Virus record (IMG/VR): IMGVR_UViG_3300033977_000108
Coordinates: 62,001-126,000 of that record
Strand: one strand, 5' to 3'
Length of the DNA stretch: 64,000 nt
Shown here: in pieces, positions 13,644 through 31,000 of the stretch
How positions within the stretch are numbered: position 1 is the first letter of the stretch
How the letters are laid out: every line of letters begins with the position of its first letter
Notes under the pieces: model-generated
Seen by the model: the letters and a program-made list of their open reading frames with translations, nothing else
Databases searched by the model: none
Told to the model about the DNA's origin: nothing
Program-made: the position numbers and the translations under genes

Positions 13644-13715
13644 GTGTTGAGCATATTCATCGCCGGTCGGAGTCGCCAAGCGTCTCCGGCCGGTGAGCTA
13701 ACCTTTGCTTAGCGC
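13644..13715 (+). ncRNA. Candidate structured RNA element between sheath and tube genes
   Basis: Nested stems 13644-53/13706-15 and 13660-72/13684-96, with all non-Watson-Crick pairs being G-U. Confidence 0.45.
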
Positions 13716-13761
13716 CATGAACTGTAGATGTACATTTGAAGCTTAATAATTAGGAGATGTT

Positions 13762-14475
13762 ATGTCAAACTCACCTTTGCCAACTGTTACAGGCAATCCA
13801 TCAACCGAAAGTGATATAGCTCGTAGTTACAACTCATTTTCCGGTAGCGATATACGAGCCATGATTGGCCCCTATACCTTCGCTGAAATCCAAGCTATTA
13901 GTTACAGCGTCACACGCGAGAAGGCGCCTATCTATACGATGGGTTCTCCTGATGTGCGCTCTTTCAGCCGTAACAAGCGCGGTGTGGCTGGCTCGTTGAT
14001 CTGGATCAACTTTGACCGTCATTCTCTGTTGAACTTGATCCGAGCGTCACAGGGTACTTTTGTCGCTAATGTTGACGATCTACGGCCTGAATTCAGAACG
14101 GCCCAAACCGCTTATATTCAGGATGGGTCATTGGTCTCTGCGCCAGAGGTTCGTGATACCGGCGTGCCGGCGTCTGCTTATATTGACCAGTCAACTCTTG
14201 GAGCCAACATTGCTACAACTGGTGCTTTGAGCGGATATAAAGAACTGGCAATCCCTTGGTATTCTGACCAGATTCTGCCTTTTGATGTGACTGCTTCCGG
14301 CGCGAATGAGTATGGTGCGGCTACAGGTATGAAGCTGTATGGTGTGGAAGTCTTGAATGAAGGTAGCGGCATTTCAATTGATGACCCAGTTACTGAAATG
14401 CAGGCTACTTTCGTTGCCCGCCTGGCTATGCCTTGGATGGCCATCAGGACGCCTTGGACCAATTCTGGCGCCTAA
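13762..14475 (+). CDS. Tail tube protein
   Basis: Follows the sheath, strong RBS; SFSGSDI..QAISYSVTREKAPIYTMG..RGVAGSL..LPFDVT..GISIDD..TFVAR. Confidence 0.75.
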   Translation: MSNSPLPTVTGNPSTESDIARSYNSFSGSDIRAMIGPYTFAEIQAISYSVTREKAPIYTMGSPDVRSFSRNKRGVAGSLIWINFDRHSLLNLIRASQGTFVANVDDLRPEFRTAQTAYIQDGSLVSAPEVRDTGVPASAYIDQSTLGANIATTGALSGYKELAIPWYSDQILPFDVTASGANEYGAATGMKLYGVEVLNEGSGISIDDPVTEMQATFVARLAMPWMAIRTPWTNSGA

Positions 14476-14505
14476 TCCCTGACCCGCCATAGCAAAACCT
14501 CCCTT

Positions 14506-14537
14506 GGCCGCGGCGCTTGGTCGCGGCCTTCTTTCTT
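14506..14537 (+). terminator. Intrinsic terminator after the tube gene
   Basis: GGCCGCGGC-gcttg-GTCGCGGCC followed by TTCTTTCTT. Confidence 0.7.
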
Positions 14538-15533
14538 ATGTCAATACCCAACTTTGACCCACTTAGTGCTTTGGATGGCGGCTTATCTACGCCTAACCCA
14601 CAAATACAGCAAAGCAGCACTCTGCCTGTTTCAGGCATGACAGTGCTGCCACCTGACATGACTGGGGTACCTTTGACCCAGCCTCCCAATCAGATAAGCG
14701 ACCAGCAGGCAGCCGGTATACAACAAGCCGCCAATACTTGGCCCAGCTATGCACCTTTACCGCAAATAATGGACCTGAATGGCGTTCCATTGAGTCTGAA
14801 CCCTAATCCCTCTGATGTTGGCTCGGACCTTATTATCAATCCGACAGCTATGAATACACTGGCCACCCCAGGTATTACAAATGATTACGACAACAACATT
14901 ACAAGCTATACCGGGTCAGATTTGCGGCTTATTGTGGATGTAGTAGATGCTTTTCGTCCCTGGCCGACCAGCACAAAGCTGACGAAGCAGCTCATAGAAT
15001 GCACTACTATTACCGTCTCCGTTCATAGGGAAAAGGATGCTGTACGGGCTTGTAGTTTTATCAATCCAAAAGGCTTCGCGCGTGGCAAGAGAACAATAGC
15101 TGGTACGCTTATTTTGACCCAGTTCACGGTAGATGTATTGCTTCGGTTCCTGGGCGCCACACTTTGGAATGATACCAGCAAAGACAGCGGCTATGTAAAA
15201 GTAGACCAGCTGCCGCCTATGGATTTTACTATGGTGTTTGGTAATGAACAGGGACAATGCTCCTATCGCCGCCTGCTTGGGGTTGATTTTCTCACCGATG
15301 GCACCATCTATTCAATGAATGACGCTATGACAGAACAGACCATCAGTTTTGTGGCGGCTGATTTTACGCCCCTATTGCCATTCAATCTGAAATGTTTATC
15401 CAACAACATACGGCCAAGCGCATCGGCGCAGCTGACCCCCGGCGACCTAATAAGAGCCAACACCCAGAATTCCAGCAATACGATACAGAATAACACCAAT
15501 GTGAAGCCAATAGAAAGTGTGATAGGCCAATGA
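14538..15533 (+). CDS. Tube-like paralogue 2 (tube initiator-like)
   Basis: SYTGSDL..TVSVHREKDAVR..GKRTIAGTL..DQLPPMD..SFVA aligns with the tube. Confidence 0.7.
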   Translation: MSIPNFDPLSALDGGLSTPNPQIQQSSTLPVSGMTVLPPDMTGVPLTQPPNQISDQQAAGIQQAANTWPSYAPLPQIMDLNGVPLSLNPNPSDVGSDLIINPTAMNTLATPGITNDYDNNITSYTGSDLRLIVDVVDAFRPWPTSTKLTKQLIECTTITVSVHREKDAVRACSFINPKGFARGKRTIAGTLILTQFTVDVLLRFLGATLWNDTSKDSGYVKVDQLPPMDFTMVFGNEQGQCSYRRLLGVDFLTDGTIYSMNDAMTEQTISFVAADFTPLLPFNLKCLSNNIRPSASAQLTPGDLIRANTQNSSNTIQNNTNVKPIESVIGQ

Positions 15534-17373: not shown

Positions 17374-17814
17374 ATGACCGAGAGTCTGACCCCCACAGAG
17401 GAACAGAAAACCAAAGAAACGCTACTTACCCCTGCCGAATTCCTGGCTACCGTTCCAGGCGCGCCGACGCCACAGCAACTGGATGGTTGGAAAGCCAATG
17501 TGCCAAATCACAGGCTCAAGCTATTCGCCCCTGAAAAGGGTCGGGTATTCATTATCCGTGGTATTACCGGCTTGGAAATGACTGCCATACGGCGAGCCGT
17601 TCCTGATAATGCCCGAGATCCAGATGATGAAGTCCAGTGCGCTGCTGTTGAAAAGGCTGTGCTATGGACTAATACTACTGCCAGCAATAGGATTACCAGG
17701 GCTGAGTTGGTATCTGGTTCGGCTGGTTTGCCGTTCGCTATCTTCACTGTGATAGCAGAACTGAGCGATTATTACGCGCCCGACTTTATCGCCAGTGTAT
17801 CTGGAGATCTATAG
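17374..17814 (+). CDS. Putative tail assembly chaperone
   Basis: QLDGWK..FIIRGIT..E; between tube genes and the giant genes. Confidence 0.55.
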   Translation: MTESLTPTEEQKTKETLLTPAEFLATVPGAPTPQQLDGWKANVPNHRLKLFAPEKGRVFIIRGITGLEMTAIRRAVPDNARDPDDEVQCAAVEKAVLWTNTTASNRITRAELVSGSAGLPFAIFTVIAELSDYYAPDFIASVSGDL

Positions 17815-17826
17815 GAAGAGGCTACA

Positions 17827-18339
17827 ATGCGCAAATGGGAAGCCATCTGGCGTGATGGCGTTCGCATTGTCTGGCGCAGCCTCCGTTGGGAAGAATACAA
17901 AGCTTTCAGTTCCCGCACCCATCACCCAGCTGACCTATATCTGGAAATCTATAAAACTTGTATCCTTGAGGGGCCTTCTGCCGAGGAGGTCCCATTCGGG
18001 GTTGTTGATTGGCTGGGCCTGCGGGAGTTTGAGCAGAATCCCTTTTCCGGCCGGCTTAGCCAAGTCAATATTGCCATCAATGAAAAACGTGTTTGGTTAG
18101 CAAGCAACTATTTCGCAGCTTGTTCGGCTATCCTAGCCTCGGTATTGCACATACCCTTGGAGACTATTGAAAAGATGGATGCGGATGAGTTCTTCTTTCG
18201 TGTGGCGCAGGCCGAGTTCCTAATAGGCAAGCCTCTTGACCCAAGAACCAAGTCTACCAAAGGTAGGCACAAGAAGCCACACGAGCCCGGCGCCAGGGAT
18301 ATGCAGTTTGAAAAGTCCGACTTTACCTTCACCAAATAG
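17827..18339 (+). CDS. Putative second tail assembly chaperone
   Basis: WRSLRWEEYK pattern similar to the upstream gene; position. Confidence 0.5.
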   Translation: MRKWEAIWRDGVRIVWRSLRWEEYKAFSSRTHHPADLYLEIYKTCILEGPSAEEVPFGVVDWLGLREFEQNPFSGRLSQVNIAINEKRVWLASNYFAACSAILASVLHIPLETIEKMDADEFFFRVAQAEFLIGKPLDPRTKSTKGRHKKPHEPGARDMQFEKSDFTFTK

Positions 18340-18341: not shown

Positions 18342-21300
18342 ATGTCATTGCCTTATGACCAATCATTCTTTGTTCTTGACATTGAGACGGGCGGCGAGCT
18401 TCTCGAACGCGGCGGGGAAAGTGTAGCCGGGTTTTTTGAGGCAAGTGAACGAGGCCGCTTTGTTGGCAGTGCCTACCATACTCTTCACTCCAATCATCCA
18501 CTCTTACAAGTAGACGTCTATAGAGGCGGAGCATTTGCTCCTATTGGCGGCCCAGGCGGCGGTTATGTGCGCCCGCCTGTGGGCGCTATTGCCAGCACTT
18601 TCTCCCTGAAAAAAGGCACTTGGGAGCGCGCGATGGCTTCTTCCATGACGGAGGAGGAGGCCGCCCATAGAGTATTTGAAGAGCTGGCAGCCCACATAGG
18701 GCAACATAAGCCTGCTATAGTCAGTGGCTATCACCCACTATACGATTTATCCTTTATTGAGACTCTTACCTGGCGCTATCCGAGCTTGTCTGCTTATAGG
18801 GGCAAACTTGCCGAATGGCGTCGGTTAGGACAGCTGAAAATTCAGGAGCTTGAGGAACCTTTCCTACGCCTGGCCCTGGCTTTTGGACAGCAGCATAAGG
18901 AATTCGCAGAGAAGTTCTTCCGTATGGGGCCGAACACCCCAATCACCCCAGCCTACTGGCCTGGCAAGCTGGCAGAGACCTTTGAGGAGATGAAGTTCGT
19001 TCCTGGATGGGGCCAGGAAAATATAGTAAGAGCATTGGGTGGTCAGAGGTTTTTAAAGTCATTACAACTGCTCTATCCATATGTCAATCTTACCGGTTTG
19101 CATGAAGCCCGTACTGACATCATCGCTTCTATTCACTCTTACGAGTTATTCCAGAGGGCATTACAAAAAGTAGAGGCTGGAGTAGATATTGAGACAGCCC
19201 TACAAGGTGCCCTACCAGACATAGGCCTTACGGCTGAAAGCTTCTTTAGATCGGTTTATCGTCCTTTTGAAACGGCGGCGGGCGCTATAACAACAAAATC
19301 AGTCGCCCGAGCCGGCTCCCGCATAAAAGGCAAATACTGGGCCATAGCAGCTGGCGCTACTCTATTATCTGCTCTATTGGCCAGCTCACGGGTCGGCAAG
19401 CCTGCTCATCACATAACCGGCTTACAAGATATAGGCCTGGCTCCTGAAGGCAGACACGCGCGCACCGACTTTGGATCCGGTTATCAGGGGCTGGATAAAA
19501 GTCCTACCCTTACCACTGCAGAATATATGCTGGCAGCCGGGGTATTATATGGGACTCATCGCTATCTCCTGCGCGCGGTGCCAGAATATGGTAAGACCCT
19601 ATTCAGTTTCTTCCGGACATTAGAAGAACGCTCGCCAGCGGGTATATTGAAGACTTTTAGTCTAGGGGATATATTTTCTGCTTATATACCCAGTACGCTC
19701 CATTATGAGCCAGGACAGCTAATCTCCAAGGGCACTGGTCTTTATACAGAACTGGGCGCCCATTTCCAAAGACTGACAGGCCTCGGTAAGGAACAAATGC
19801 GTGCTGGCTTGACCTTTGAAAGGGTCAGCACGGCCGAGCCATACATGCGATTGAAGGAAGCGCCTGGTGTTTCAGTAAGATTTGCCAGGCAAGGGCGATT
19901 GGTTACTTCTTCCGCTCGCTATGGCGCCCCCTTACGCCCAGCGCCTCCTATGCCAAAGACCTATATGTCTTTGGATCAGATGTTCAATCTAAAAGCTTGG
20001 AGTCGCGCATTTGAGGCCTTAAAGGAAACACAGCGCGGGCGGCGCCTACAAGGGATTGCTTGGAGCACTTTTGAAGGCGAGAAGATAGGATTTCAGCCTT
20101 TGTATGTCCGCCGCGGCCCTGGGGCGGCAAAACAGGTTGCCAGCCGCTTAGATACTTTACGACGCGTATTATTTGAACTGGCAGAACGCCCACAGCGATT
20201 AATGACTGAGGCGGGAGTAGGCCTAAAGGCAGGCTCCTATAACAAAGTCTTCAACTTTCCGTTTGTAGGGAAAGGCGGGCTGATAAATCAGCTCCTTCTA
20301 AAGCGAGTTTTACCAGCTTATCTTGCTTATACCGGCCTGCGTTGGCTGGATTACAAGACGGGCCATAGAGCGAGCGATGCCATAGCTGGCCTGCCTTTGC
20401 ATGCTAATATCTTGCGGGCAGAGCTCACAGACTTTATACCTGGCCTGCGCAAGGTAACGGATTTCTATGCCAGGAATGTGCCTGGGCCCCAATATGGGCC
20501 TTTGGCCTTACCTGCAGGCGGTGCTTTTCTTGGTGCGGCCTTGCACTATGCTCATGTTTTACAGGGTCGATTCCAAACAGAGGCCGTTAGAAAAGCCGCG
20601 CTTTCAAAATATGGCAAAGTGGGAGCCTTGATTGGCGCCGCCCTTATGCTGCCATTGCTGCCGGGTATGATAGGCAGCCGAAAGACAGCGGATGAACTGC
20701 GCCGTATCTATTCCGGCGAAGAGGAAATACCGGTCAGGGCCGGGCGCTGGTGGGAGGTGGGCTCCACCCCATTCTGGGGCGGACGCATCAAGTATTTTAG
20801 ACCGCATTGGTATGCCAGAATGAAGGCGCGCTCCGAAGCGGTTTCATTGTGGGGCTCCGAGGAAGAGTATTGGAGACATCACCCTCTACTGCACCCTATA
20901 CGGGCATTCACACATCCTTATGAACTGGAAGAGAGGAACTATTGGCAACGGCCTTATCCGGTAACCTCGCCTGCCTTTTCTAATGTTCCATTGATTGGGC
21001 CTATTCTCGCCGCGACAATAGGCAAAATAGTAAAGCCGCCACGCTACATGCATCAGGGCGAATGGTCCCCGGAAGAATACACCCTTTATAGTCCGAGGCT
21101 GGAGCCGAAGGAGGGCGGCCTGCCTCCAGCGCGCGCTAGAGATGAGTATGGCCTGATGGATGTACTCAAGCGCGAGGCGTATAATGTCACCGAATTCATA
21201 GGATTGCCTGGGTTTATAGCCCAAAGCTTATGGCAACGTATTCATCCGCCGCAGCCCGGCGGGCCTCCTATGCTACAGGGTAGCAGGCAAATGACCAACA

Positions 21301-23264
21301 TTTCCAGGCGCTATTATGAGAAAGAGTTAGGCGCTTTGATAGGAATAACGCCTAGCGCTGATATATATGGATTTTCAGAGCCTCTTCGTCGCTTCATTCA
21401 GCCCGAACGGCTCGGCGCCCAAGTCAATGAAATACCAAATCAGATGCCTTCTTGGCTGCCTGGCGAGGATTACTATACCAACTTCCGCGTAGGTGATATT
21501 TATGCCCGCATACCAGAAGGTTATATGCGATTGCCGGGGGCTGGCTATGAGGCGCTACACCCGGAATTGCAAGGTCTAAAGCCCGAGGAATATCCTGATT
21601 TGACAAAGCTCAGAATTCTGGCTGATGTCGCACCTTATTCAAGGCAATATGAATCAATGCGTGTCCGAATGCAGGCTGAAGCCCGGCGCGATACAAACTT
21701 GGCTATTGAAGTTGATAGAGTAACGCAACAAGTAGAACGATTGAAGAAATCTACTATTCAACTTAGTCATCGTCGCTTTACCGAAGAGGTGCAGAAGATA
21801 CGCGGTACTATAAAAGCCGCTGGTCCGACAGGCGTGCTACTGGAAGAATATCCTGGCCGCACTTTCCAATTTAGCGCCCTCGGTATGTCAATGTCGGACA
21901 TGTCAGCCGTTGTATTGGGAGAACAGAATGCCCTGACTCGGACGCAAATGGTACAGGAGGTAGAGCGCAGACAACAGCGGAGAGATGAGTTTATTGCGAA
22001 CTATTTACAGCCCGGGACCCAAGTATTCGCGACTGTGCCGGTAGGCGCCGTAGAACATGCCCCCGAAATACAAGCGGTACTTGAAACACGCGATATAAAC
22101 ATCAACAGGGCCCTCATCAACCAAGGATTAGCCAGATTGCGACCAGAGGAGGCCGGAGCTGAATATCAGGCCATGGAAGGACCTGCTGGAAGGGTATTAG
22201 GCACTCTGGCCGAATCTTTAGCCTTTGCCGGCGATCAGAGTATGTTCAATCCGATGCGCTACATACCGACGCCATTCGGCACCAAACTTTGGCAGATGCA
22301 AACGCCCCTCGCACGCTATCAAGAAGAAGAGATTTACGGCAATCGTATGCGCAGATGGGACAGACCTTTACATGATTTCTTGATGCCTTATCTGCGTGGT
22401 ATGACCCATAGACTGACCGGTCAGAATTTGATGCCGGCCGAGGTACAACACAAGAGAAACTTGAATGAGTTGGCTGATGTTATGAAATACTTGCGCGGCA
22501 TACAATCCGGCAGTGCCATGCAAGCAGCCCGCACAGCAATGGGAGCTAATTTGTTTGCCGAGCCTTCATATGTAATGTCCACTTTACCACGACGTGAACA
22601 GCTTTATTTCGCCGACTTTCTGAATGAAACGAACCCTGATAAGCGCAGAGAGATTCTTGATTCTGTGGCGCCGGAGACCGCCCGTGCCTTGCAGGCTCAA
22701 TGGGTAACCAGAGATGCCAGTATACTTCGTGCAGAAGGGAAGCGAGTCCCACCTATAGGCGAAGGCGGCCGGCTATACACACCAGAGGATGTTGAAGATT
22801 ATGAGCGCGCCCAGACTGATTTGACCTATGGTCAGTATGTCCGAAGCAGGGAGATAGCCGAGTTCTTTGCTCGCACTGGCTGGGCTATGCCAGAAGCGGG
22901 GGCCGATGCCTACAATCCTGCCATTGACTACGAAGATTTGAAAGTCAAGATGCTAATGCAGGAAGGCTATAATCTGCACGATTTCAATCTTTATGACGAC
23001 CGCGCCAATACCGTCTGGCGTAAGCCCTATCTGGATGGAGCTATACGGGAGCTCACCAGTGGCGGAAATCGGTCGGTAGAGAACATCAGGCGCACGGTAG
23101 AAAGACTTATGCTGGACTCACAAGGCGGCAATCCGAAAGTGATTGCTACGGGGCATCCGTCTAATCAACCGATAAATCGTGTAAATGTTACCTTTGATGA
23201 ACATCCGGAGAACGACATGCTCCGTGACATACAGCGTAATAGAGAAGAGTATGCGGTAGGCTAA
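18342..23264 (+). CDS. 1640-aa virion/tape-measure-locus protein with N-terminal DEDDh exonuclease domain, TM segments and a degenerate SNase-like domain
   Basis: VLDIETGG / GYHPLYDL / LHEARTD; hydrophobic YWAIAAGATLLSALL and GALIGAALMLPLL; NINRALINQGLA. Confidence 0.6.
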   Translation: MSLPYDQSFFVLDIETGGELLERGGESVAGFFEASERGRFVGSAYHTLHSNHPLLQVDVYRGGAFAPIGGPGGGYVRPPVGAIASTFSLKKGTWERAMASSMTEEEAAHRVFEELAAHIGQHKPAIVSGYHPLYDLSFIETLTWRYPSLSAYRGKLAEWRRLGQLKIQELEEPFLRLALAFGQQHKEFAEKFFRMGPNTPITPAYWPGKLAETFEEMKFVPGWGQENIVRALGGQRFLKSLQLLYPYVNLTGLHEARTDIIASIHSYELFQRALQKVEAGVDIETALQGALPDIGLTAESFFRSVYRPFETAAGAITTKSVARAGSRIKGKYWAIAAGATLLSALLASSRVGKPAHHITGLQDIGLAPEGRHARTDFGSGYQGLDKSPTLTTAEYMLAAGVLYGTHRYLLRAVPEYGKTLFSFFRTLEERSPAGILKTFSLGDIFSAYIPSTLHYEPGQLISKGTGLYTELGAHFQRLTGLGKEQMRAGLTFERVSTAEPYMRLKEAPGVSVRFARQGRLVTSSARYGAPLRPAPPMPKTYMSLDQMFNLKAWSRAFEALKETQRGRRLQGIAWSTFEGEKIGFQPLYVRRGPGAAKQVASRLDTLRRVLFELAERPQRLMTEAGVGLKAGSYNKVFNFPFVGKGGLINQLLLKRVLPAYLAYTGLRWLDYKTGHRASDAIAGLPLHANILRAELTDFIPGLRKVTDFYARNVPGPQYGPLALPAGGAFLGAALHYAHVLQGRFQTEAVRKAALSKYGKVGALIGAALMLPLLPGMIGSRKTADELRRIYSGEEEIPVRAGRWWEVGSTPFWGGRIKYFRPHWYARMKARSEAVSLWGSEEEYWRHHPLLHPIRAFTHPYELEERNYWQRPYPVTSPAFSNVPLIGPILAATIGKIVKPPRYMHQGEWSPEEYTLYSPRLEPKEGGLPPARARDEYGLMDVLKREAYNVTEFIGLPGFIAQSLWQRIHPPQPGGPPMLQGSRQMTNISRRYYEKELGALIGITPSADIYGFSEPLRRFIQPERLGAQVNEIPNQMPSWLPGEDYYTNFRVGDIYARIPEGYMRLPGAGYEALHPELQGLKPEEYPDLTKLRILADVAPYSRQYESMRVRMQAEARRDTNLAIEVDRVTQQVERLKKSTIQLSHRRFTEEVQKIRGTIKAAGPTGVLLEEYPGRTFQFSALGMSMSDMSAVVLGEQNALTRTQMVQEVERRQQRRDEFIANYLQPGTQVFATVPVGAVEHAPEIQAVLETRDININRALINQGLARLRPEEAGAEYQAMEGPAGRVLGTLAESLAFAGDQSMFNPMRYIPTPFGTKLWQMQTPLARYQEEEIYGNRMRRWDRPLHDFLMPYLRGMTHRLTGQNLMPAEVQHKRNLNELADVMKYLRGIQSGSAMQAARTAMGANLFAEPSYVMSTLPRREQLYFADFLNETNPDKRREILDSVAPETARALQAQWVTRDASILRAEGKRVPPIGEGGRLYTPEDVEDYERAQTDLTYGQYVRSREIAEFFARTGWAMPEAGADAYNPAIDYEDLKVKMLMQEGYNLHDFNLYDDRANTVWRKPYLDGAIRELTSGGNRSVENIRRTVERLMLDSQGGNPKVIATGHPSNQPINRVNVTFDEHPENDMLRDIQRNREEYAVG

Positions 23265-26200
23265 TGGCGTTGAATCCTTTTCTAAAGTTCGCCAGTAATC
23301 CGGTTCTCACCGGGCTGACCGGCTTGGCAGCCGTGACAGCGCCGTTTGCTATGCGAACGGAGAATCGCGGCTATTTTAAGACGGCAGCCATTACTACTCC
23401 TTTGATACTGGCAGCAGGCATTGCTGCACCATCCTTTATTTCCTCGGCGGCATCCGCCATTTCAGAACATGTACGCTTTACTGGTAGGGCTTTTAGCAAA
23501 TTGGCCCAAGCCGGTTCTATGGATTATAAGACACTCCGGCAATTCTTGGAAACGGGCAACATAGGGAGTTCTGCTTATGACGCGGCCAGCGAATTTCTAC
23601 CGGCTGCCGCAATAGATTGGCTTGGCCAGTTTGGCCGGCCAGCCGCCAAAACGCTTACGCAAAGATTGACAGACATTACCACTTTGTTGAATAATATGGC
23701 TACCAATGAGTTATGGGAGGAGAACAAATGGCTGCTCACTCATGCCTTTGAGCGCAGCCGCCTAAGGACAACTCCTCCAGCGGCTTTGGCAGGTGCCGAT
23801 TTGACCATAGCTGGTACTCCTTTGGGCAGGGAAGAGCTTTTCCAACGCCTGCGCCAAGCCGAACTAAATAAGAATGAATACTTCTTGGAGGTGCTGGAAG
23901 GTCAGCTGCGCTATGGAGGCATGCTACGGGACCTCGGACCAATGACTGATATAGCAGCACAAGCGATACAAGCCATGCCGCCGGAAACATTTGGAGTAAA
24001 AGACCTGATTGGCGGTGTATCGCCTTTAGATTTGTTGAGAAGTCAGAAAAGAGAGAAGGTTTATGAAGCCCTAATGGCGAGGCAAAATCTATTGGACACC
24101 GCTACCTTTGTGGCAACCGATGTAGCGACAACGCCAAAACTTATCCGCATCAATCTTCGCCTTCCAGGAGGGGATTTAGCAATACCTATTTTGGATCCGA
24201 CTACAGGAGTTGTCCATGTCGGTGCTGATTATCGTATTGCTTCTGGTCGGGGTGTCTGGGAGCCGGTCGGGGATACAAAGACCGTGCGTATGGCTTTGGA
24301 TGAGTGGATAGCCTCTCATTTGGACCGGCCATTTGCGGATTTACAAAGTGCCTTGGATATAGCTCCTGTCGGCAGTATAGATAAACTGAATGCCTACAAA
24401 TATGAGAGCATGGCTGCTGATAGGGCCGCTGTTCTTACCCCGGGCGCTACGAAGCGTTATAGCATGGAATACATACCGGCCCCAGGTAAAGTATTCCCAG
24501 GAAATAGAACATACGAAGATTTGACGCAGGCCGAGAGGATGACTTATGCCCGCAGTGCCTTGGCCGATTGGGCATCTCCAATAACCGCAGAACATCCCTT
24601 CCTTGGTGGCACTTTTGGCGCCAGGGAGTTGGAGTTCTATACGGCTGGCCGCATGGCCCCGTGGAGTAGGCAATCGGAAGCCATGCGAGCATTCAACAAG
24701 CCCTTGCATTATGGTTATGTGCCGCTGGAACTTCGGCCCAGATTTACGACTGCTGCTATGGCAGGCGAAGCCTCGGTTAGACATACATTTGCTATGATAA
24801 GCCCACAGGAGGCCGAGTTGTTTGGCGGCTTACCCCTATCAACCGGCGGGCTGGCCGGCGGAAAAGGCGCGGCCATTGGAAGATTGAGATTTGAACACCC
24901 CAATCTAACAGAGGCACAAGCCTCGCAACTGTGGGATACCTTGGTTAGAGAGCAATTGAGTAATCCTGATGTATTACAGGCTGCCCGTTTGGCAGGAGGT
25001 CTGGGTGAAACAGAAGCCATCCTGAGACCTGGCCAGGCCACCCGGATACCAACTATCAAGAACCGCTGGATACCATTGAATACAGTCAACATACCTTTCA
25101 ATACGCCCTATGGACCCAATCAAGTAATAGGCTGGGGCGATATAGAGCGTGTTGTCTCCGAAGCCGATGAAACCCGCCTATTGAAATTGGAACGGAGCAT
25201 TTCAGGACAATTACAGGCTTTGGTAGAAGAGACTTACTTCTCCAGGACTGGGGATAAGCTGAATGTCGGTGGGGTAAAAGCCACCACTATTCAGCCTACT
25301 GCGGAGGATTTTGAGGCGTTGCGACAGGTTGTAAATCTGAAGCGCAGGATGCTTGGAGAAACTGAAATCCCAGAGGATGCCACCGCTCTAATCAATGAGA
25401 TGTTCTTCCATGAGAAAATACATGAGCCTGCTGGTCTATTAGCCGAGCAGGCTGCCAGCTTATACGAGGAAGCCAAGGCTTTGCAGACGGAGTTTCCTTT
25501 TGATCCCGCCCTCACCGAAGCTATGACAGCCTTTAGAGAGGGCATGGCGGCACAGAAAATCTCCTACACCGGCGCCGGATTTGAAGAAGATACAGCGGCA
25601 CTGGCTGGTTGGCTGCGGGAGGATTTGAATACACGACAGGCACGGATACTTGACCTCGCCGAAGGTTTAGCCAAGAACCTGGAAATCTACGCCGGCGCGC
25701 ATCGTGGAAGAATAATGAAGCATGGCGGCGTCCTAAAGGGTTTCCTGAATGCCAAGAATGAACAAAGCCTTCTGCGTTATACATTATTCCATCATTTGGA
25801 GGCCGGCACTGCCAAATGGAACGCCCAAGGCTTATATATGCCGAAGCGTACTGGGGTGACTTGGGAATTCTATAGCCGTCTCTACGAAAGTGGCTTGATT
25901 GAGTCAATGCGTACTGTTTTTGGCAGGGTCAATTTCTTACATGGCGAGATACGGCCGATGGCTGATTTGGCCCGCTATTTCGGCGCGGGAGATTATACGA
26001 AAGTCTTTGGCGAGCGAGTATTCAGCATGGCCGAAGCTGTGCCTTCCGGGTTCTCCATGAAGGGGCTTACTGGGCGAGTAGGCTTGTTTGATTATACTGA
26101 CCCAAGGTTTAGGAATCCCTTCTCTATTCGTCTTGACCGCCCGATTGATGTAGAGATGGGCAGGCAAATGGTAAAACATGAATACATCCCTGTATTGGGC

Positions 26201-28072
26201 TGGGGTACTTATGGCGGCGGCCCGAATATAGAAGGCCCAGGACAATTCTATGCCACCGCTTACGAGAAAGCCCTCAATAGACTTATCGCCGCTTCCAAGG
26301 GAACTGGGGTGGGCTATGGGGAAGCTTGGCGAGCTTATCAGGACGCCATCGCCAAAGCGGCATTTGGGAAAGAGGGAGCTGTTTGGAGGGCTACGACATT
26401 TGATCCGATGGCTATAAGTGCGACATCAGAGCAGATAGCCAAACTTGAAGGCAGGAGTCCATTTGAGATTTTTGTATCGGAAGAAATAGCCGAAGGCTTT
26501 GGACCAGAGGTGCGTGCTGCTATGAGGAAGGAGGGTGTTTATGGCATCATAACTCGGCACCCGGAACAGGCGACATTGCCTATTTTGGTCAGAGTTCCAG
26601 CTAGGAATTCAGCCGAGATAGCGCTCCTGGGGAAGCGTGGCATTGGCATTTCTAAACAATTGGCAGGTGCTTTGGAGGCGGATTTTGATGCTGACACTTT
26701 GAACTTATTTTTGATGTCGCCGCGCGATAGACCAGCGATTGCCGAATTGAGGGCGGCTATAGAAGAACCGACAAGCTTTGCTAATCAATATCTCAACACC
26801 ATCAATCTTATGTATGCCAATGCCGAAGCGTCGGCTACCCATAGGATGAGTACAATACGCGGCGAGGGCTCTCCTTGGGAATACTTGCTTGGTAAGGTAG
26901 GTAAAGAGGCCGGCAATGTGGAAACAGCCGCCTCTCGATTGAGCGGTCGATTCATAGGACATTTTGCGAATCTGGTGTATGCGTCCCAGACTATGTTGAG
27001 AAGCCATCCAGCTTTTATGATTGACCCCAAAGAGCGGGCATTTTTGAGCAATGTGTTGTGGCTCCCGAAACAGGCAGCCATCGGCGCAGTGAAAAGCACA
27101 CAAGCCGTTGGGACACAAACCGCGGTAGAGACTATCTTTGAACGGATGCGCGCCGGCCTGGGTATGGGGACCAAAGTAGGTGCCGAGCAATATATTTCTG
27201 GCTTGCAGGAGATTGCCAAAGGCTGGAAGTGGGAGGCAGCCCTAACACCTGAAACAGCAGCCCAATTGTTTGGCGTATCCGAACAAGAGCTGGCCGAAAG
27301 CATCGGTATGGGAACGGTTGGCAATTTACGGCAAGCCATGCGCGATCAGAGACACTTCAATATTGTGCAGCAGGTAGTGGGGTCTGAACGCGTCCGGCGG
27401 GATTTGGAAACCTTGATTCAACATCCTTATGGGCAACAAGCAAGGAATGTCACCCATTTGTTGATGACACCTTCTGAAAGAATAACCACAGAGGCCTTTC
27501 AGGAGTTTCGCCGTATTGGCAATGTGGCTCCTGAATTACAGGCATTGGCTGGCGAGCAGCGTGGAATACGCGATGTCGTGGCTGGTATTCTTGGCGCTTG
27601 GAATCGGGAAACCGCTGCTGCCCGAGGCGCTGTTGGCAAAGCCTTCAAAAGTACTCTACCTATACTGGGCTTGGGACTTGGCGCCGCTGCTTTGGCCGGC
27701 GTATTTGTCGGTGGCGGAATGGGAGAAAAAAGTGCCTCTGCTTATCGGCCAGAAATGGCTTTGGGAACGACCGATAATGTCCCAGGTGAGCCTATTGCTG
27801 GCCTTATGGCGCCTGTCCGACCGCCCAGAAGGATTATACCCGGGCCGCCAATGACAAGGACAGCAGTAATTGCACCTATGCGTCAGTCTGTGGATTTAGA
27901 GGTCAGATCTCCTTCTGGGGACCGAGAACGAGCAGCTGAGCTTAGCCGAGTGGTTTCACAGGTAGCTGGTGGAGGCATCACGTTCTCAAATATCAACTAT
28001 GTGAATGGTCATAAGCGATTGAGCACGCTGCGCATGAGACAAAAGGTACATGAAATGTTAGGTGAAGAATAA
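23264..28072 (+). CDS. 1602-aa putative single-chain double-psi beta-barrel RNA polymerase (virion-associated)
   Basis: GDKLNVGGVK (25250), ITRHP (R at 26555), LEADFDADTL (DFDAD 26681-26695); hydrophobic termini. Confidence 0.6.
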   Translation: MALNPFLKFASNPVLTGLTGLAAVTAPFAMRTENRGYFKTAAITTPLILAAGIAAPSFISSAASAISEHVRFTGRAFSKLAQAGSMDYKTLRQFLETGNIGSSAYDAASEFLPAAAIDWLGQFGRPAAKTLTQRLTDITTLLNNMATNELWEENKWLLTHAFERSRLRTTPPAALAGADLTIAGTPLGREELFQRLRQAELNKNEYFLEVLEGQLRYGGMLRDLGPMTDIAAQAIQAMPPETFGVKDLIGGVSPLDLLRSQKREKVYEALMARQNLLDTATFVATDVATTPKLIRINLRLPGGDLAIPILDPTTGVVHVGADYRIASGRGVWEPVGDTKTVRMALDEWIASHLDRPFADLQSALDIAPVGSIDKLNAYKYESMAADRAAVLTPGATKRYSMEYIPAPGKVFPGNRTYEDLTQAERMTYARSALADWASPITAEHPFLGGTFGARELEFYTAGRMAPWSRQSEAMRAFNKPLHYGYVPLELRPRFTTAAMAGEASVRHTFAMISPQEAELFGGLPLSTGGLAGGKGAAIGRLRFEHPNLTEAQASQLWDTLVREQLSNPDVLQAARLAGGLGETEAILRPGQATRIPTIKNRWIPLNTVNIPFNTPYGPNQVIGWGDIERVVSEADETRLLKLERSISGQLQALVEETYFSRTGDKLNVGGVKATTIQPTAEDFEALRQVVNLKRRMLGETEIPEDATALINEMFFHEKIHEPAGLLAEQAASLYEEAKALQTEFPFDPALTEAMTAFREGMAAQKISYTGAGFEEDTAALAGWLREDLNTRQARILDLAEGLAKNLEIYAGAHRGRIMKHGGVLKGFLNAKNEQSLLRYTLFHHLEAGTAKWNAQGLYMPKRTGVTWEFYSRLYESGLIESMRTVFGRVNFLHGEIRPMADLARYFGAGDYTKVFGERVFSMAEAVPSGFSMKGLTGRVGLFDYTDPRFRNPFSIRLDRPIDVEMGRQMVKHEYIPVLGWGTYGGGPNIEGPGQFYATAYEKALNRLIAASKGTGVGYGEAWRAYQDAIAKAAFGKEGAVWRATTFDPMAISATSEQIAKLEGRSPFEIFVSEEIAEGFGPEVRAAMRKEGVYGIITRHPEQATLPILVRVPARNSAEIALLGKRGIGISKQLAGALEADFDADTLNLFLMSPRDRPAIAELRAAIEEPTSFANQYLNTINLMYANAEASATHRMSTIRGEGSPWEYLLGKVGKEAGNVETAASRLSGRFIGHFANLVYASQTMLRSHPAFMIDPKERAFLSNVLWLPKQAAIGAVKSTQAVGTQTAVETIFERMRAGLGMGTKVGAEQYISGLQEIAKGWKWEAALTPETAAQLFGVSEQELAESIGMGTVGNLRQAMRDQRHFNIVQQVVGSERVRRDLETLIQHPYGQQARNVTHLLMTPSERITTEAFQEFRRIGNVAPELQALAGEQRGIRDVVAGILGAWNRETAAARGAVGKAFKSTLPILGLGLGAAALAGVFVGGGMGEKSASAYRPEMALGTTDNVPGEPIAGLMAPVRPPRRIIPGPPMTRTAVIAPMRQSVDLEVRSPSGDRERAAELSRVVSQVAGGGITFSNINYVNGHKRLSTLRMRQKVHEMLGEE

Positions 28073-31000
28073 TGAGTTTGATGGCAACAGAGGAACGGAC
28101 AGCAGGAACCTCGGGGTACTTCCGCATTGGTGACGTGGTTTTGGATATTCCTCCGGAAGAGATAATCACGAGCAAGATAACCAATAACGAAGAAATGACC
28201 CCTATTCGTGCGCCTTATCCTTTCTTGGAGAAAACCGGGCACGCCAGATGGGATGTGACCATCCATTGGAAAGCCCTCGTGGATAATACAGGAGGTGCTT
28301 CCGATTACTCTCAATGGATAAAGGTGCGGCGCATTCTGGCGATGTTGAAGGCCGCTCCTTTTGTTGAAGTGGAGAATAGGCACCTACGGCATCTATTTAT
28401 AAAAGACGATACGATAAACGCCCTATATTCAAGGATGGCTTTTGCCTTGAAGCAGCTGCGCGTGGATGTAAATCCAGACTTGGTTGATTGCTTGGATTGT
28501 ACCCTGACCATGTGCCTGTTCAACTATCGGCCATTTAGTAAAGACTTTGCCTACTTGGGAAAAGACGGGCGGCAGGTCAGCGCACACGAGTCGCCGTTCT
28601 TCGCGAAATACCTTGATGATTGGATTTCCAATAACTTGGACGCGCCTTATGCCGGCGAAGATATAGACTTTACATCAGCTTGGGATATACAAAAAGATGG
28701 CACGCTATGGTTCAAATGGCGGGAGATTATAGCTTTGCCCTTGACCCCCGTTTTAGGAAAGGACATGGGCGTTGTTCCATCCTTGGGCACTTGGAAACGC
28801 CCGCCTAATAGCCAGCAAGATACCGAGGCGGATTTGGCCAATCGCAGATACTGGCCGTGGACGCTGGATAAAAATAATGAAAGCCAGGTAACAGCCCTGC
28901 GTAATGCTATCATAAAATACGAATCCGTATCTGCGGCTTATCCCCATGGAGGCAACCCCAACGCTATATCCCCGACAGGCGCCACCGGTTTGATGCAATG
29001 GACCTCGACCAGTGCTATACAGACATTGAGCACGTTGGGAGGTCATTATTTTCAGGCTGCCATACAGAGCGGATTGTTGCAGCGTATGGGCAACGGCAGC
29101 CTGCAATGGGCCGGGCCAGACCACATGCAGAGCTATCATACTTGGATGACCGGCACCCAAGCACAGACCGGGCTAACGAGTGAGCAGCAACTGGACATGC
29201 AAAATCAGATGGCTGATACATGGATGACCATGAAGCTGCAGGAATCCAATTATGATGTTGACCAGACCTTGATGCATCATCTTGGTGTGTATGAGTACTA
29301 TTCAAGTCTCAATACTGTAAAAATACATGGTAGGGACAACTATTATGCTTCCAAGCCTCATGCAGAAGAGGCAAGTGTATGGTGGGACAATGTAGTCGGC
29401 GACTTCCGTACAGCCATCAACGACCCGACGGCCTTGCAGGGCTCATCGCCGCCCCAAAATGTGAACACAGCGGCGCAGGCATCTGTTCAACCAGTGCCAG
29501 CTACTCCTACTCCGAATCCGCCCAATCAGCCAGCTACGTCAACCCAGAATGTAACCAGTGAATCAGCGCCAACTGCGGCAGAAATGAAAGCTATAAATGA
29601 TAAAATCACTGAAGGCTGGATGCCAGACCATTATACCGATCTCTGGGCTTTTTTATACTGGGTCCACTCCATGAAGCTGGTGGATGAAGAGCATGGTGAT
29701 AGCGGGCCTCTATTAGAAATGTCTCCGGTTGATTGCGGCCTGTGGCCGACTAATCTGTCAGTTGTATTCTCCAATAACCTGGCCCAGCTGCCGCTACAAG
29801 ACGAGGTGTATCCTACTTATCAGCACATGGGGCCGGCTACAACCTTGGTCAGCGTTAGTTTTACTTCAGTCGGCAAGTCAAAGTATGAAGAAGAGGAGCC
29901 CTATCACGTAGGTCTGTCTTGGCTGACTGCTACCTTCTCTACATTGGACAATCAATATCACAACTATCACTCTTTGTGGCGGATGGCCTCCACTAACCAC
30001 AAGATACAAGGCATTGTCTTGCAGAATAAAGTCTTGAATATGTTAGGGATACGAGGGATATTACTAGACAGTTTCACCACCCAGACCGTAAAGGAAAGCC
30101 CGAATGTTGTCCAGGCCGAGTTTTCAGCCTATCAGTTTGAGAACGTTTATGAGGACCAGGTAGCTTATAGGGTAGCGGGAATAGGCACGCTGGAGGCAGC
30201 TCTGTGGTGGGATATGCTGGCAGGTACGGCTAATGGGCAGCCTACACCTAATCATAAGCTATTCAATGATTTTAGGGCGGGGCTGACGCCGGAACAGGCT
30301 GCTCCTTATGTAACGCTATTCGGATTACAAGATACTCTGAATAATCCGACATCTGCCGCTGCGCAGAGTAATTTGCAGTCTTATCTCACCGAGAATCGCG
30401 GCTATCTTGATGACCCGGGCTGCCGAGTAATACCAATGCCTGCTGATGTAGAAAACAATCCCCTATGGACGCAGCATATGAATGTTACTGATCCGGGGAC
30501 TGTATTGCAGCAGTTTCCAAACCTACAGAACGAATATCCAGCCATCCCGGCGGCGATGGAAGCCCATGTCGGATTGACCTATACCGATTGGTTCGTATTG
30601 TCAAGAAGCATAGGCGTCCCGACCACCCAGGCTAAACCTTATCTTTCCTGGCTAATCGGAGAAACTCCGAATCTGGCCGGAGTGCCTCCTACTTCATCGT
30701 ATACCAATTATTTGGCTGTGGCGGGCCAGATAGACACCTTGATTGCCAATCAGGCGACGAGCCAAGGTATAGTACAACCAATTACCCAGCTCTGTCAGTT
30801 TTATTTCAACTTCAAACGCAAAACGGATAACTCCCTTTTATCAGCAATGCTGACCATTGAAAGAATGAATAATCCGCTTGGGCAAATATTCAAAAATTCT
30901 ATCAATTCAGGCGGACCAGGGCGTGACCCTTGCAATGCAGAGCACGGAGCATATAGAGATATTGGACTGATGCCCGTATCTAATGCTGGTATAGATAATA

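What the first reader, a model, noticed from the sequence alone, without database searches (positions are those of the whole stretch)
23264..28072. Putative virion RNA polymerase with a DFDAD active site embedded in the tail operon
Seen, in the expected order: GDKLNVGGVK (aa ~663-672; cf. beta GDKxxxRHGNKG with two lysines), ITRHP (aa ~1098; cf. beta' R-x-P) and, ~40 aa later, ADFDADTL (aa ~1140; cf. NADFDGD, all three Asp kept, Gly to Ala). Known: single-chain two-barrel RNAPs exist in phages (crAss-like gp66 with DFDID, SPbeta YonO). Unusual here: location between tail chaperones and hub in a myovirus, hydrophobic anchors at both ends, and an exonuclease partner. Inference: a tail-delivered, membrane-tethered transcription/DNA-entry machine, possibly doubling as tape measure. 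Distant relatives may already be in databases.
Basis: partly seen in the sequence, partly recalled or inferred. Interest (0 to 1): 0.85.

Follow-up and report, generated by a model that had tools for sequence, protein, structure and literature searches.

The report
Cryptic RNA polymerase in phage tail operon
A 1,602-residue "hypothetical" protein in the tape-measure slot of a 205-kb contractile-tailed phage has the fold and the strictly conserved catalytic residues of a cellular-type (two-barrel) RNA polymerase, so this group of giant phages probably brings its own transcription enzyme into the cell.

Summary
ORF 23264-28072 (+) contains GDKLNVGGVK (aa 663-672), ITRHP (1096-1100) and ADFDAD (1139-1144). 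In 40 homologues with about 22% mean identity, only 25 of 1602 positions are at least 95% conserved. They include K665, K672, G1035/K1036/R1042, R1098/P1100 and D1140/D1142/D1144 (40/40).

An AlphaFold2 model of aa 380-1440 built on that alignment is confident (pLDDT 89, pTM 0.89) and mixed alpha/beta, not an all-helical tape measure. All 50 best PDB matches are largest subunits of multisubunit RNA polymerases. Viral matches include both beta- and beta'-type subunits. Pfam, PHROGs, PDB sequence search and tblastn find nothing, and public copies are all named "hypothetical protein".

The tail module is orthologous to those of Bacillus phage 0305phi8-36 and Acinetobacter phage ME3. This gene occupies the slot of 0305phi8-36 gp146, a virion protein by mass spectrometry annotated "hypothetical tape measure". 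ME3_36 (1603 aa) shares the fold, the RxP...DxDxD motif and both hydrophobic anchors.

Best reading: a new family of single-chain two-barrel RNA polymerase, made late and probably delivered with the tail. Virion location and any ruler role are inferred. No exonuclease partner was found.

The parts
23264..28072 (+). Whole gene (G2, 1602 aa): single-chain two-barrel RNA-polymerase-like protein with terminal hydrophobic anchors
   Evidence: ORF and translation. The family has 46 representatives at 50% clustering, mostly 1500-1800 aa. All public copies are named 'hypothetical protein' and lie on contigs of up to 216 kb.
23384..23461 (+). N-terminal hydrophobic segment(s), aa 41-66, inside a conserved N-terminal motif (AP..RGY..TA..TTP)
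   Evidence: Kyte-Doolittle scan and consensus. It is weaker and less constant in the family than the C-terminal one.
24401..27583 (+). Globular polymerase core, aa 380-1440, modelled with high confidence
   Evidence: AlphaFold2 on alignment A3: pLDDT 89.0, pTM 0.89, mixed alpha/beta. Foldseek PDB: top 50 are all RNAP largest subunits, best E 1.7e-4, probability up to 1.00. BFVD gives phage giant proteins, then RNAP beta and beta' subunits and LEF-9.
25013..25291 (+). Beta-rich domain, aa about 584-676, proposed beta-type barrel. It ends in G663-x-K665-x6-K672 (nt 25250-25279).
   Evidence: Eight beta strands in the model at residues 205-297. K665 is conserved in 34/35 and K672 in 33/34 sequences, and the next residue is G in 30/34. 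The same pattern occurs in E. coli beta at 1063-1074, GDKMAGRHGNKG. The assignment to the barrel is inferred because no coordinates were available.
26366..26713 (+). Beta'-type barrel, aa about 1035-1150: G1035-K1036..R1042..D1047-P1048, R1098-H-P1100, D1140-F-D1142-A-D1144
   Evidence: G1035, K1036 and R1042 are conserved 39/39; R1098, P1100 and the three Asp 40/40. The strand / RxP / strand / strand / short helix / DxDxD / strand order in the model matches E. coli beta' GKRVDYSGRSVITVGP(344-359)...NRAPTLH...NADFDGD(458-464). The best hhalign local alignment to rpoC places the family DxDxD on NADFDGD (E 0.066). An hmmsearch of PDB sequences gives archaeal Rpo1N 453-480 at E 0.9.
26918..27001 (+). 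Long helix, aa 1219-1246, with conserved R1225 (37/38) and invariant N1236 (38/38): bridge-helix candidate. Invariant Q1270/I1273/K1277 follow.
   Evidence: Helix 840-867 in the model and conservation. The functional assignment is inferred from its position after the DxDxD barrel, as in other two-barrel RNAPs (PMC10770324).
27656..27712 (+). C-terminal transmembrane-like helix, aa 1465-1483
   Evidence: Hydropathy 2.02. A segment at the same distance from the C-terminus (120-140 aa) is present in 22 of 28 full-length members, and in ME3_36 at 1480-1498.
27713..28069 (+). Conserved C-terminal domain, aa 1484-1602 (YRPE..G..D.VPGEP...PPR...VAP...DLEV...TVNY...LR.RE), of unknown role; proposed docking or assembly domain
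   Evidence: Consensus. A profile of aa 1440-1602 picks ME3_36 residues 1472-1550 as the best of 667 ORFs (E 0.0024).
18342..23264 (+). Upstream giant G1 (1640 aa), translationally coupled (TAATG). Homologue of virion structural proteins 0305phi8-36 gp145 and ME3_35; not a paralogue of G2.
   Evidence: BLASTP 1e-43 to ME3_35 and 3e-28 to gp145. No similarity to G2. Junction sequence. gp145 was found in virions by MS (annotation).
28072..33738 (+). Downstream giant G3 (1888 aa), translationally coupled (TAATG): baseplate hub / cell-wall lysin
   Evidence: PHROG 20474 endolysin at 7e-46 and a weak SLT hit. BLASTP to 0305phi8-36 gp147 hub and to ME3_37. Junction sequence.
17374..18339 (+). Two small ORFs (146 and 170 aa) in the position of the two-gene tail chaperonin of 0305phi8-36 (gp143/gp144)
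   Evidence: Position only. No family hit and no BLAST hit to gp143/144. The same pair of about 150 and about 190 aa ORFs precedes the giants in L002 and L004-L007.
11793..15533 (+). Tail sheath (11793-13631) and two tail-tube paralogues (13762-14475, 14517-15533), which define the module as a contractile tail
   Evidence: PHROG sheath hits. BLASTP of the tube proteins to 0305phi8-36 gp140/gp141 and ME3_30/31.

Best explanation
G2 is the founding window member of a previously unannotated family of roughly 1600-residue, single-chain, two-barrel (double-psi beta-barrel) nucleotidyl transferases. It is most likely a DNA-dependent RNA polymerase.

Shown:
- The central 1060 residues fold like the catalytic core of multisubunit RNA polymerases.
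- The residues that do the chemistry in those enzymes are the most conserved residues of the family. These are the three metal-binding Asp, the R-x-P and GK...R elements of the beta'-type barrel, and two Lys of a beta-type motif.
- The gene sits in a late, translationally coupled block of three giant genes. The block lies between the small ORFs in the tail-chaperone position and the baseplate of a myovirus related to 0305phi8-36 and ME3.
- It occupies exactly the slot that holds the MS-verified virion protein annotated as tape measure in 0305phi8-36.

Inferred:
- The protein is built into the tail, or co-ejected through it, together with G1 and the hub-lysin G3.
- On sheath contraction it is expelled, and its N- and C-terminal hydrophobic helices insert into the cytoplasmic membrane.
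- The polymerase core then faces the cytoplasm and transcribes the first-entering phage DNA independently of host RNA polymerase. This parallels the tape-measure-fused virion RNAP of Thermus phage P23-45 and the ejected gp66 of crAss-like phages.
For: Motifs present. A family of 46 representatives was found only by exhaustive HMMER.

Conservation: only 25/1602 positions are at least 95% conserved, and they include K665, K672, G1035, K1036, R1042, R1098, P1100, D1140, D1142 and D1144 (40/40).

Structure: AF2 with the MSA gives pLDDT 89 and pTM 0.89, with beta-rich domains exactly at the two motif regions. All 50 best PDB matches are RNAP largest subunits, including phage AR9 nvRNAP beta'. BFVD matches include poxvirus and giant-virus beta- and beta'-type subunits and baculovirus-type LEF-9.

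Sequence: hhalign places the family DxDxD on E. coli NADFDGD. The motifs are collinear with E. coli beta/beta'.

Context: the synteny sheath-tube-...-two small ORFs-G1-G2-G3-baseplate is kept wherever flank is held, in full in L002, L005 and L007 and upstream-only in L004 and L006, which end at or inside the G2 homologue. The module is orthologous to 0305phi8-36 gp139-151 and ME3_29-41. gp145 and gp146 are virion proteins by MS. Both junctions are TAATG overlaps.

Architecture: ME3_36 in the same slot has 1603 aa, R1174-E-P...D1217-H-D-Q-D, both anchors and a Foldseek match. The C-terminal anchor is kept in 22/28 members.

Precedent: P23-45 gp96 (PMC10770324).
Against: - No sequence method reaches significance against any known RNAP: Pfam none, PDB hmmsearch E 0.9, hhalign E 0.066 with reported probability 0.84%.
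- Foldseek E-values are modest (1e-4 to 5e-3) and TM-scores low (0.11-0.17 against PDB), as expected for a core buried in lineage-specific inserts.
- Virion presence is not shown for this family. The MS-verified occupant of the slot, gp146, has no DxDxD and no detectable homology to G2.
- A compact globule of more than 1000 residues is hard to fit in a tail-tube lumen unless it is stored partly unfolded.
- The rest of the 205-kb genome was not surveyed for another polymerase or for promoters.
Confidence: 0.62

Rival explanations
1. It is a genuine two-barrel polymerase but it is not packaged. It would be a non-virion enzyme that is simply encoded in the late operon, for example for late or next-cycle transcription, priming, or RNA synthesis at the membrane.
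For: No proteomic evidence for this family. 0305phi8-36 keeps its (YonO-like) RNAP gp99 outside the structural module (PMC2147016). The globular core is awkward cargo for a tail tube.
Against: It lies inside a translationally coupled trio whose other two members are orthologues of a virion structural protein and of the baseplate hub. The position is invariant in every locus with context. Terminal membrane anchors and a conserved C-terminal domain have no obvious use for a soluble late polymerase. Late-made polymerases in structural modules are virion enzymes in the known cases (PMC10770324).
Confidence: 0.15
2. It is the tail tape measure itself as well as a polymerase. The chain would be stored extended or partly unfolded in the tube, set tail length, and refold into an active polymerase after ejection.
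For: It occupies the slot of the gene assigned as tape measure in 0305phi8-36 (PMC2147016). Length is tightly kept across very divergent members (1516-1809 aa; ME3_36 1603 vs 1602 aa). It has hydrophobic segments, as tape measures do. P23-45 shows that a polymerase and a tape measure can be one chain (PMC10770324).
Against: Residues 380-1440 are predicted as a compact alpha/beta globule with pTM 0.89, not an extended helical ruler. Unlike gp96, no long helical region is left over, only about 380 aa at the N-terminus and 160 aa at the C-terminus. G1 (gp145-like, 1640 aa) could be the ruler instead. Tail length is unknown.
Confidence: 0.15
3. It is a two-barrel enzyme with a different chemistry. 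Candidates are an RNA-dependent RNA polymerase, a primase-like enzyme for initiating replication of the incoming genome, or a DNA polymerase like archaeal PolD.
For: The two-barrel superfamily includes RdRPs (QDE-1) and PolD (PMC10770324). Nothing here tests substrate or template specificity.
Against: All 50 best structural matches are DNA-dependent RNAP largest subunits; neither PolD nor QDE-1 appears among them. The GK...R...DP, RxP and aDxDxD pattern is that of beta'. No Pfam RdRP (PF05183) hit appears in 30 members.
Confidence: 0.06
4. It is a structural tail protein, and the motifs and fold similarity are fortuitous or are relics of an inactivated enzyme.
For: Sequence searches are not significant.
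Against: The catalytic residues are the most conserved positions of a family at about 22% identity. This is the signature of purifying selection on chemistry, not of a relic. The high-confidence non-helical model has uniform RNAP matches.
Confidence: 0.02

Closest known systems
Thermus phage P23-45 gp96: virion RNA polymerase fused to the tail tape measure protein (PMC10770324)
   Same: A single-chain two-barrel polymerase encoded at the tape-measure position of the tail module. It has a DxDxD with an R-x-P about 37-42 residues upstream and is associated with membrane-spanning segments. The proposed role is the same: transcription of the first-entering DNA at the membrane.
   Different: There is no detectable sequence relationship (hhalign E 0.13, misaligned). 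gp96 does not appear among the 50 listed PDB matches (whether its chains are in the searched PDB copy was not checked). gp96 is 5002 aa, with about 3800 aa of true tape measure and a metallopeptidase; G2 is 1602 aa with almost no non-polymerase length. The host phage is a siphovirus with an 84-kb genome, whereas here it is a contractile-tailed 205-kb phage. The spacing between the two barrels is larger here (about 475 aa between the lysine motif and DxDxD).
Acinetobacter phage vB_AbaM_ME3 gene ME3_36 (AND75197.1, 'hypothetical protein', 1603 aa)
   Same: Same slot in an orthologous tail module and the same length. It has R-E-P at 1174 and DHDQD at 1217, at the same spacing; an N-terminal hydrophobic helix at 26-44 and a C-terminal one at 1480-1498. 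Foldseek matches its predicted C-terminal half (E 1.1e-6). The C-terminal profile hit has E 0.0024 among 667 ORFs.
   Different: No BLAST-level similarity. It has never been annotated as a polymerase. [quoted passage not shown]
Bacillus phage 0305phi8-36 gp146, 'hypothetical tape measure protein', a virion protein by mass spectrometry
   Same: Same position between gp145 (homologue of G1) and the hub gp147 (homologue of G3), one gene after the chaperonins.
   Different: 2537 aa, with no DxDxD and no significant similarity (hhalign E 0.097, at the C-terminal hydrophobic region only). That phage has a separate YonO/RdRP-like polymerase, gp99, elsewhere (PMC2147016). The slot therefore appears to hold a non-homologous or unrecognisably diverged protein.
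crAss-like phage phi14:2 gp66 virion RNA polymerase (PDB 6VR4) and SPbeta YonO / QDE-1-type single-chain two-barrel polymerases
   Same: Both barrels lie in one chain. The protein is a giant phage protein encoded beside other giant proteins in the structural region.
   Different: Not recovered among the 50 best PDB matches. crAss-like BFVD entries appear only at low probability (0.28-0.75). No PF05183 hit. gp66 belongs to a podovirus and is thought to be capsid cargo (own knowledge). Terminal membrane anchors are not a described feature of it.
Multisubunit RNA polymerase beta' and beta (bacterial, archaeal, eukaryotic, phiKZ/AR9-type phage enzymes)
   Same: These are the best structural matches. 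The motifs are collinear: GxK..KG (beta), GK..R..P, RxP, aDxDxD (beta').
   Different: The two catalytic halves are fused in the order beta-like then beta'-like in one chain. There is no detectable Pfam domain of either subunit, and no zinc-binding or clamp elements were identified. It is flanked by membrane anchors.

Membership tests
Two-barrel (double-psi beta-barrel) RNA polymerase superfamily | Beta'-type barrel carrying an invariant metal-binding D-x-D-x-D loop | tested here: met
   D1140/D1142/D1144 are conserved 40/40. They lie between a short helix and a beta strand of a six-strand beta-rich domain in a pLDDT-89 model. hhalign aligns them to E. coli NADFDGD.
Two-barrel (double-psi beta-barrel) RNA polymerase superfamily | Upstream beta'-barrel elements (GK...R...P strand, R-x-P turn) collinear with the DxDxD | tested here: met
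   G1035/K1036/R1042 are conserved 39/39 and R1098/P1100 40/40. The order and similar spacing match E. coli beta' 344-359, 425-427 and 460-464.
Two-barrel (double-psi beta-barrel) RNA polymerase superfamily | Second (beta-type) barrel supplying two conserved basic residues | tested here: inconclusive
   K665 (34/35) and K672 (33/34) lie in G-x-K-x6-K-G on two strands of a beta-rich domain, like E. coli beta GDK..NKG. BFVD hits include beta-type subunits at probability 1.00. However, hhalign to rpoB did not find the motif, and no coordinates were available to verify a double-psi topology or proximity to the Asp triad.
Two-barrel (double-psi beta-barrel) RNA polymerase superfamily | Overall structural similarity of the core to solved RNA polymerases | tested here: met
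   All 50 top Foldseek PDB hits are RNAP largest subunits, with probability 0.69-1.00 and best E 1.7e-4. TM-scores are low (0.11-0.17) because only the core is shared.
Two-barrel (double-psi beta-barrel) RNA polymerase superfamily | Bridge helix and trigger loop after the DxDxD barrel | tested here: inconclusive
   A 28-residue helix (aa 1219-1246) with conserved R1225/N1236, followed by invariant Q1270/I1273/K1277, is in the right place. It was not structurally superposed.
Two-barrel (double-psi beta-barrel) RNA polymerase superfamily | Template-dependent RNA synthesis abolished by Asp mutation | not testable with these tools
   Needs biochemistry.
YonO / QDE-1-like RdRP family (Pfam PF05183) | Match to the PF05183 profile | tested here: not met
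   No hit in G2 or in any of 30 family members at E up to 5.
P23-45 gp96-type tape-measure-fused virion RNAP | Homology to the gp96 N-terminal polymerase, and fusion to a long tape-measure region with a metallopeptidase | tested here: not met
   hhalign of the family against gp96 1-1200 gives E 0.13 and a non-equivalent alignment. There is no peptidase or other Pfam domain. Only about 540 residues lie outside the polymerase core.
Tail tape measure protein | Gene position after the tail chaperones and before the hub | tested here: met
   It lies between the two small ORFs in the chaperonin position plus G1, and the hub G3. The slot equals gp146 of 0305phi8-36.
Tail tape measure protein | Predominantly extended alpha-helical chain | tested here: not met
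   aa 380-1440 is a compact alpha/beta fold with pTM 0.89. The termini were not modelled.
Tail tape measure protein | Protein length proportional to tail length | not testable with these tools
   There is no micrograph of this uncultured phage.
Virion (ejected) RNA polymerase | Physical presence in purified virions | not testable with these tools
   Only indirect evidence: late-operon position, TAATG coupling to orthologues of a virion protein (G1) and the baseplate hub (G3), and a slot shared with the MS-verified gp146.

The most novel reading that the evidence does not exclude
A whole lineage of contractile-tailed jumbo phages, including the cultured Acinetobacter phage ME3 and counted so far as lacking any RNA polymerase, carries a cryptic membrane-anchored two-barrel RNA polymerase in place of (or acting as) the tail tape measure. 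The enzyme would be stored in the tail lumen in a non-native state, be ejected first, anchor in the inner membrane by both ends, and couple genome entry to pre-early transcription. This would be a second, independent invention of the P23-45 solution in myoviruses.
Probability: 0.3. Interest if true: 0.85.

Novelty: new variant of a known kind. Interest (0 to 1): 0.72.

Why it matters
Phage-borne two-barrel RNA polymerases are known from only a few lineages: phiKZ-like multisubunit enzymes, YonO, crAss gp66 and P23-45 gp96/gp64. Each of these changed how early infection and host-independence are understood.

This family is invisible to Pfam, PHROGs and BLAST. It is annotated 'hypothetical' everywhere, and all members with long contigs lie on genomes of 160-216 kb. 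It would extend virion- or tail-linked transcription to contractile-tailed jumbo phages.

It would also contradict the current view that jumbo phages outside the phiKZ group and two YonO-carrying phages have no polymerase of their own (PMC7824862).

It gives a tractable test case in a cultured phage (ME3_36). It also adds a new, very divergent branch for reconstructing the evolution of the RNA polymerase core, fused beta-then-beta' in one chain with membrane anchors.

Practically, such phages may be insensitive to host-RNAP-targeting defences and to rifampicin during early infection.

Tried and rejected
Searches and models that gave nothing:
- Pfam and PHROGs on G2: no hit.
- phmmer of G2 against PDB sequences: only a chance hit.
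- tblastn of G2 against 50,697 phage records: no match.
- Word-indexed homologue search: timed out once and twice returned only the query.
- Single-sequence AlphaFold2: pLDDT 36, unusable.
- Pfam on 30 family members: a single PF00623 hit at E 0.032, not evidence.
- The search for related loci: the 41-sequence alignment was too divergent. The metagenome scan added two loci. The isolate/MAG genome scan found none, so no host could be assigned.

Comparisons with known proteins:
- hhalign to P23-45 gp96, to E. coli rpoB and to 0305phi8-36 gp146: not significant.
- Local profile searches of six sub-regions against 667 ORFs of ME3, 0305phi8-36 and P23-45: only the C-terminal region linked to ME3_36 (E 0.0024); the polymerase core did not.

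Ideas rejected:
- The upstream giant G1 is a paralogue of G2.
- gp146 of 0305phi8-36 carries the same active site: it has no DxDxD.
- ME3_309, the second structural match in ME3, is a second catalytic polymerase: it has no DxDxD.
- An exonuclease partner: none was found in any ORF of the window that I scanned.

Technical notes:
- Walking along the 204.6-kb contig to look for a second polymerase was abandoned. About 127 kb lies beyond the window, and each look-up adds only 10 kb.
- Two look-ups failed because I trimmed the wrong end of minus-strand ORFs. The same slip affects the minus-strand queries, harmlessly.


Full report
**1. What is there**

The finding's coordinates are exactly one ORF, 23264-28072 on the + strand, 1602 aa with an ATG start.
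- GDKLNVGGVK at aa 663-672
- ITRHP at aa 1096-1100
- ADFDAD at aa 1139-1144

A hydropathy scan confirms hydrophobic helices near both ends, at aa 41-66 and aa 1465-1483. The gene is the middle one of three giant genes of 1640, 1602 and 1888 aa. Their stop and start codons overlap as TAATG at both junctions, so they are probably translated as one coupled unit.

**2. Is it more than chance?**

One DxDxD in one protein is weak evidence; 0.058 are expected here from the Asp content. Standard searches are silent:
- no Pfam or PHROG family
- no PDB sequence relative
- no tblastn match in 50,697 phage records
- the word-indexed protein search returns only the query

An exhaustive HMMER scan of 1.84 billion cluster representatives found 46 relatives, mostly 1500-1800 aa. 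In the 41-sequence alignment (mean column identity 22%), only 25 of 1602 positions are at least 95% conserved. They include:
- K665 (34/35) and K672 (33/34)
- G1035, K1036 and R1042 (39/39)
- R1098 and P1100 (40/40)
- D1140, D1142 and D1144 (40/40)
- R1225, N1236, Q1270, I1273 and K1277

Several members read exactly ADFDGD.

**3. Fold**

A single-sequence AlphaFold2 run was useless (pLDDT 36). With the family alignment, the model of aa 380-1440 has pLDDT 89.0 and pTM 0.89. It is a mixed alpha/beta globule, not the all-helical ruler that would have refuted the idea.

Beta-rich domains sit exactly at the two motif regions:
- Model residues 205-297 end in the two-lysine hairpin.
- Model residues 671-771 carry strand, R-H-P, strand, strand, short helix, D-F-D-A-D, strand.

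That order is the one seen in E. coli beta' (...LLNRAPTLH...[24 protein letters not shown]). hhalign's best local alignment to rpoC puts the family's DxDxD on NADFDGD (E 0.066, not significant alone). A family profile against PDB sequences gives archaeal Rpo1N 453-480, its catalytic loop region, at E 0.9.

Foldseek against the PDB returns RNA polymerase largest subunits as all 50 best matches: bacterial beta', archaeal Rpo1N, Pol I/II/III/IV, poxvirus, and phage AR9 nvRNAP beta'. The best E is 1.7e-4 and probabilities reach 1.00. TM-scores are low because only the core is shared.

Against predicted viral structures, the best matches are uncharacterised giant phage proteins (E 1e-10 to 1e-6). 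They are followed by beta-type subunits (poxvirus 132 kDa, mimivirus-like beta), beta'-type subunits and LEF-9.

I could not obtain model coordinates. The geometry of the active site, with the Asp triad facing the lysines, is therefore inferred and not measured.

**4. Genomic context**

The window is part of a 204.6-kb viral contig. Upstream lie a tail sheath and two tube paralogues. Downstream lies a P2 gpJ-like baseplate wedge.

BLASTP shows that the module is orthologous to the tail modules of Bacillus phage 0305phi8-36 (gp139-151) and Acinetobacter phage vB_AbaM_ME3 (ME3_29-41):
- The upstream giant G1 matches gp145 and ME3_35, a virion structural protein by mass spectrometry.
- The downstream giant G3 matches the baseplate hub-lysin gp147 and ME3_37.
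- G2 therefore sits in the slot of 0305phi8-36 gp146. That protein was detected in virions and assigned as tape measure mainly from its length (PMC2147016).

gp146 has no DxDxD and no detectable similarity to G2. That phage keeps a YonO-like polymerase, gp99, elsewhere (PMC2147016).

ME3_36, in contrast, shares much with G2:
- It is 1603 aa long.
- It has R1174-E-P and D1217-H-D-Q-D at the same spacing as in G2.
- It has hydrophobic helices at 26-44 and 1480-1498.
- It is a Foldseek match of the G2 model.
- It is the best hit of the family's C-terminal profile among 667 ORFs (E 0.0024).

Wherever flank is held the order is the same: about 150 aa, about 190 aa, about 1640 aa, G2 homologue, about 1750-1950 aa, then baseplate. 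It is seen in full in L002, L005 and L007 and upstream-only in L004 and L006, which end at or inside the G2 homologue. Members with long contigs sit on genomes of 160-216 kb, and every public copy is called 'hypothetical protein'.

**5. How it most likely works**

Shown:
- An RNAP-like core with an intact, strongly selected active site.
- A late, coupled, tail-module location.
- Conserved terminal anchors and a conserved C-terminal domain.

Inferred:
- The protein is assembled into, or ejected through, the tail with G1 and the hub-lysin.
- After contraction its terminal helices insert into the inner membrane.
- The core then transcribes the entering DNA without host polymerase.

This is the model proposed for the tape-measure-fused virion polymerase of P23-45 (PMC10770324).

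Whether G2 also measures the tail is open. The slot and the tightly kept length argue for it. The compact predicted fold, and the lack of any long helical remainder, argue against it.

My estimates are about 0.9 that it is a two-barrel polymerase homologue with a functional active site, about 0.6 that it is virion-delivered, and about 0.15-0.3 that it is the ruler.

**6. Comparison with what is known**

It works like P23-45 gp96 and crAss gp66, but it is not a member of either family:
- no sequence relation to gp96
- neither gp96 nor gp66 (6VR4) among the top PDB matches
- no PF05183 signal

Its best structural matches are the multisubunit beta' subunits.

A 2021 survey states that jumbo phages outside group 1 and two YonO-carrying group 3 phages encode no polymerase, and it places ME3 in group 2.2 (PMC7824862). 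A 2024 census supplement of viral two-barrel polymerases, as far as its text is held, does not mention ME3, Acinetobacter or 0305phi8. Literature searches found no description of this family.

I therefore rate it as a new variant of a known kind: a new, very divergent family of single-chain two-barrel polymerase, in the tape-measure slot of contractile-tailed jumbo phages, flanked by membrane anchors.

**7. What was not supported**

- No exonuclease partner was found.
- G1 is not a paralogue of G2.
- Virion presence, activity, template specificity, promoter use and a second polymerase in the unsurveyed 140 kb all remain untested.

Noticed in passing
window 18342-23264 (+): The upstream giant G1 (1640 aa) is a homologue of 0305phi8-36 gp145 and ME3_35 (a virion structural protein by MS). 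It has a single central hydrophobic helix at aa 760-778, no family hit, and is conserved next to the polymerase-like gene in every locus. It could be the real tape measure or a co-ejected partner.
   Followed up: partly
window 28072-33738 (+): The downstream giant G3 (1888 aa) has a weak SLT-like hit near aa 293-315, a strong PHROG 20474 'endolysin' match at aa 1679-1749, and two C-terminal hydrophobic segments. It is a homologue of the hyperplastic hub gp147.
   Followed up: partly
window 2845-7548, 52956-54448 (+) and 56956-60571 (-): There is an unusually large set of glycosyltransferase genes (at least seven ORFs with hits to GT2, GT10, GT11, galactosyltransferase or the beta-1,4-GT PHROG). 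They flank the tail and baseplate module, which suggests glycosylation of virion proteins or host-surface modification.
   Followed up: no
window 2175-2930 (+): A GIY-YIG plus NUMOD3 homing-endonuclease ORF is inserted between the collagen-like tail-fibre gene and the first glycosyltransferase, partly overlapping the latter.
   Followed up: no
window 13762-14475 and 14517-15533 (+): The two tail-tube paralogues hit PHROG 9206, which is labelled 'major head protein'. By homology to 0305phi8-36 gp140/gp141 they are tube proteins, so the PHROG label looks misleading.
   Followed up: partly
window 25-2103 (+); window 1-2000: A tail-fibre ORF with collagen-like repeats lies here, and the first 2 kb have a GC content of 55% against about 48-50% elsewhere.
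   Followed up: no
window 54001-56000: There is a local GC-skew spike (0.213, against no more than 0.135 elsewhere in the window) over ORFs 54409-55730. The cause was not examined.
   Followed up: no
window 63269-63769 (-): An endonuclease VII (PF02945) gene marks the start of a block of small, non-structural ORFs. This block continues beyond the window (L018) and includes Prok-JAB, YpsA/DprA-like and metallophosphatase genes.
   Followed up: no
L017:24453-26849 (-) = ME3_309; L016:37426-37638 (-) = ME3_243: ME3 encodes a second protein (798 aa, in an early-looking region) whose predicted structure matches the G2 model (E 1.5e-4, probability 1.00). It has no DxDxD, so it may be a non-catalytic or beta-like partner. 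ME3 also annotates a 'baculo_LEF5_C' (TFIIS-like) protein, which would fit a phage-encoded RNAP system.
   Followed up: partly
L011:33172-37983 vs window 23264-28072: ME3_36 and G2 differ by one residue in length (1603 vs 1602 aa) despite having no BLAST-detectable similarity. This hints at a constraint on total length.
   Followed up: no
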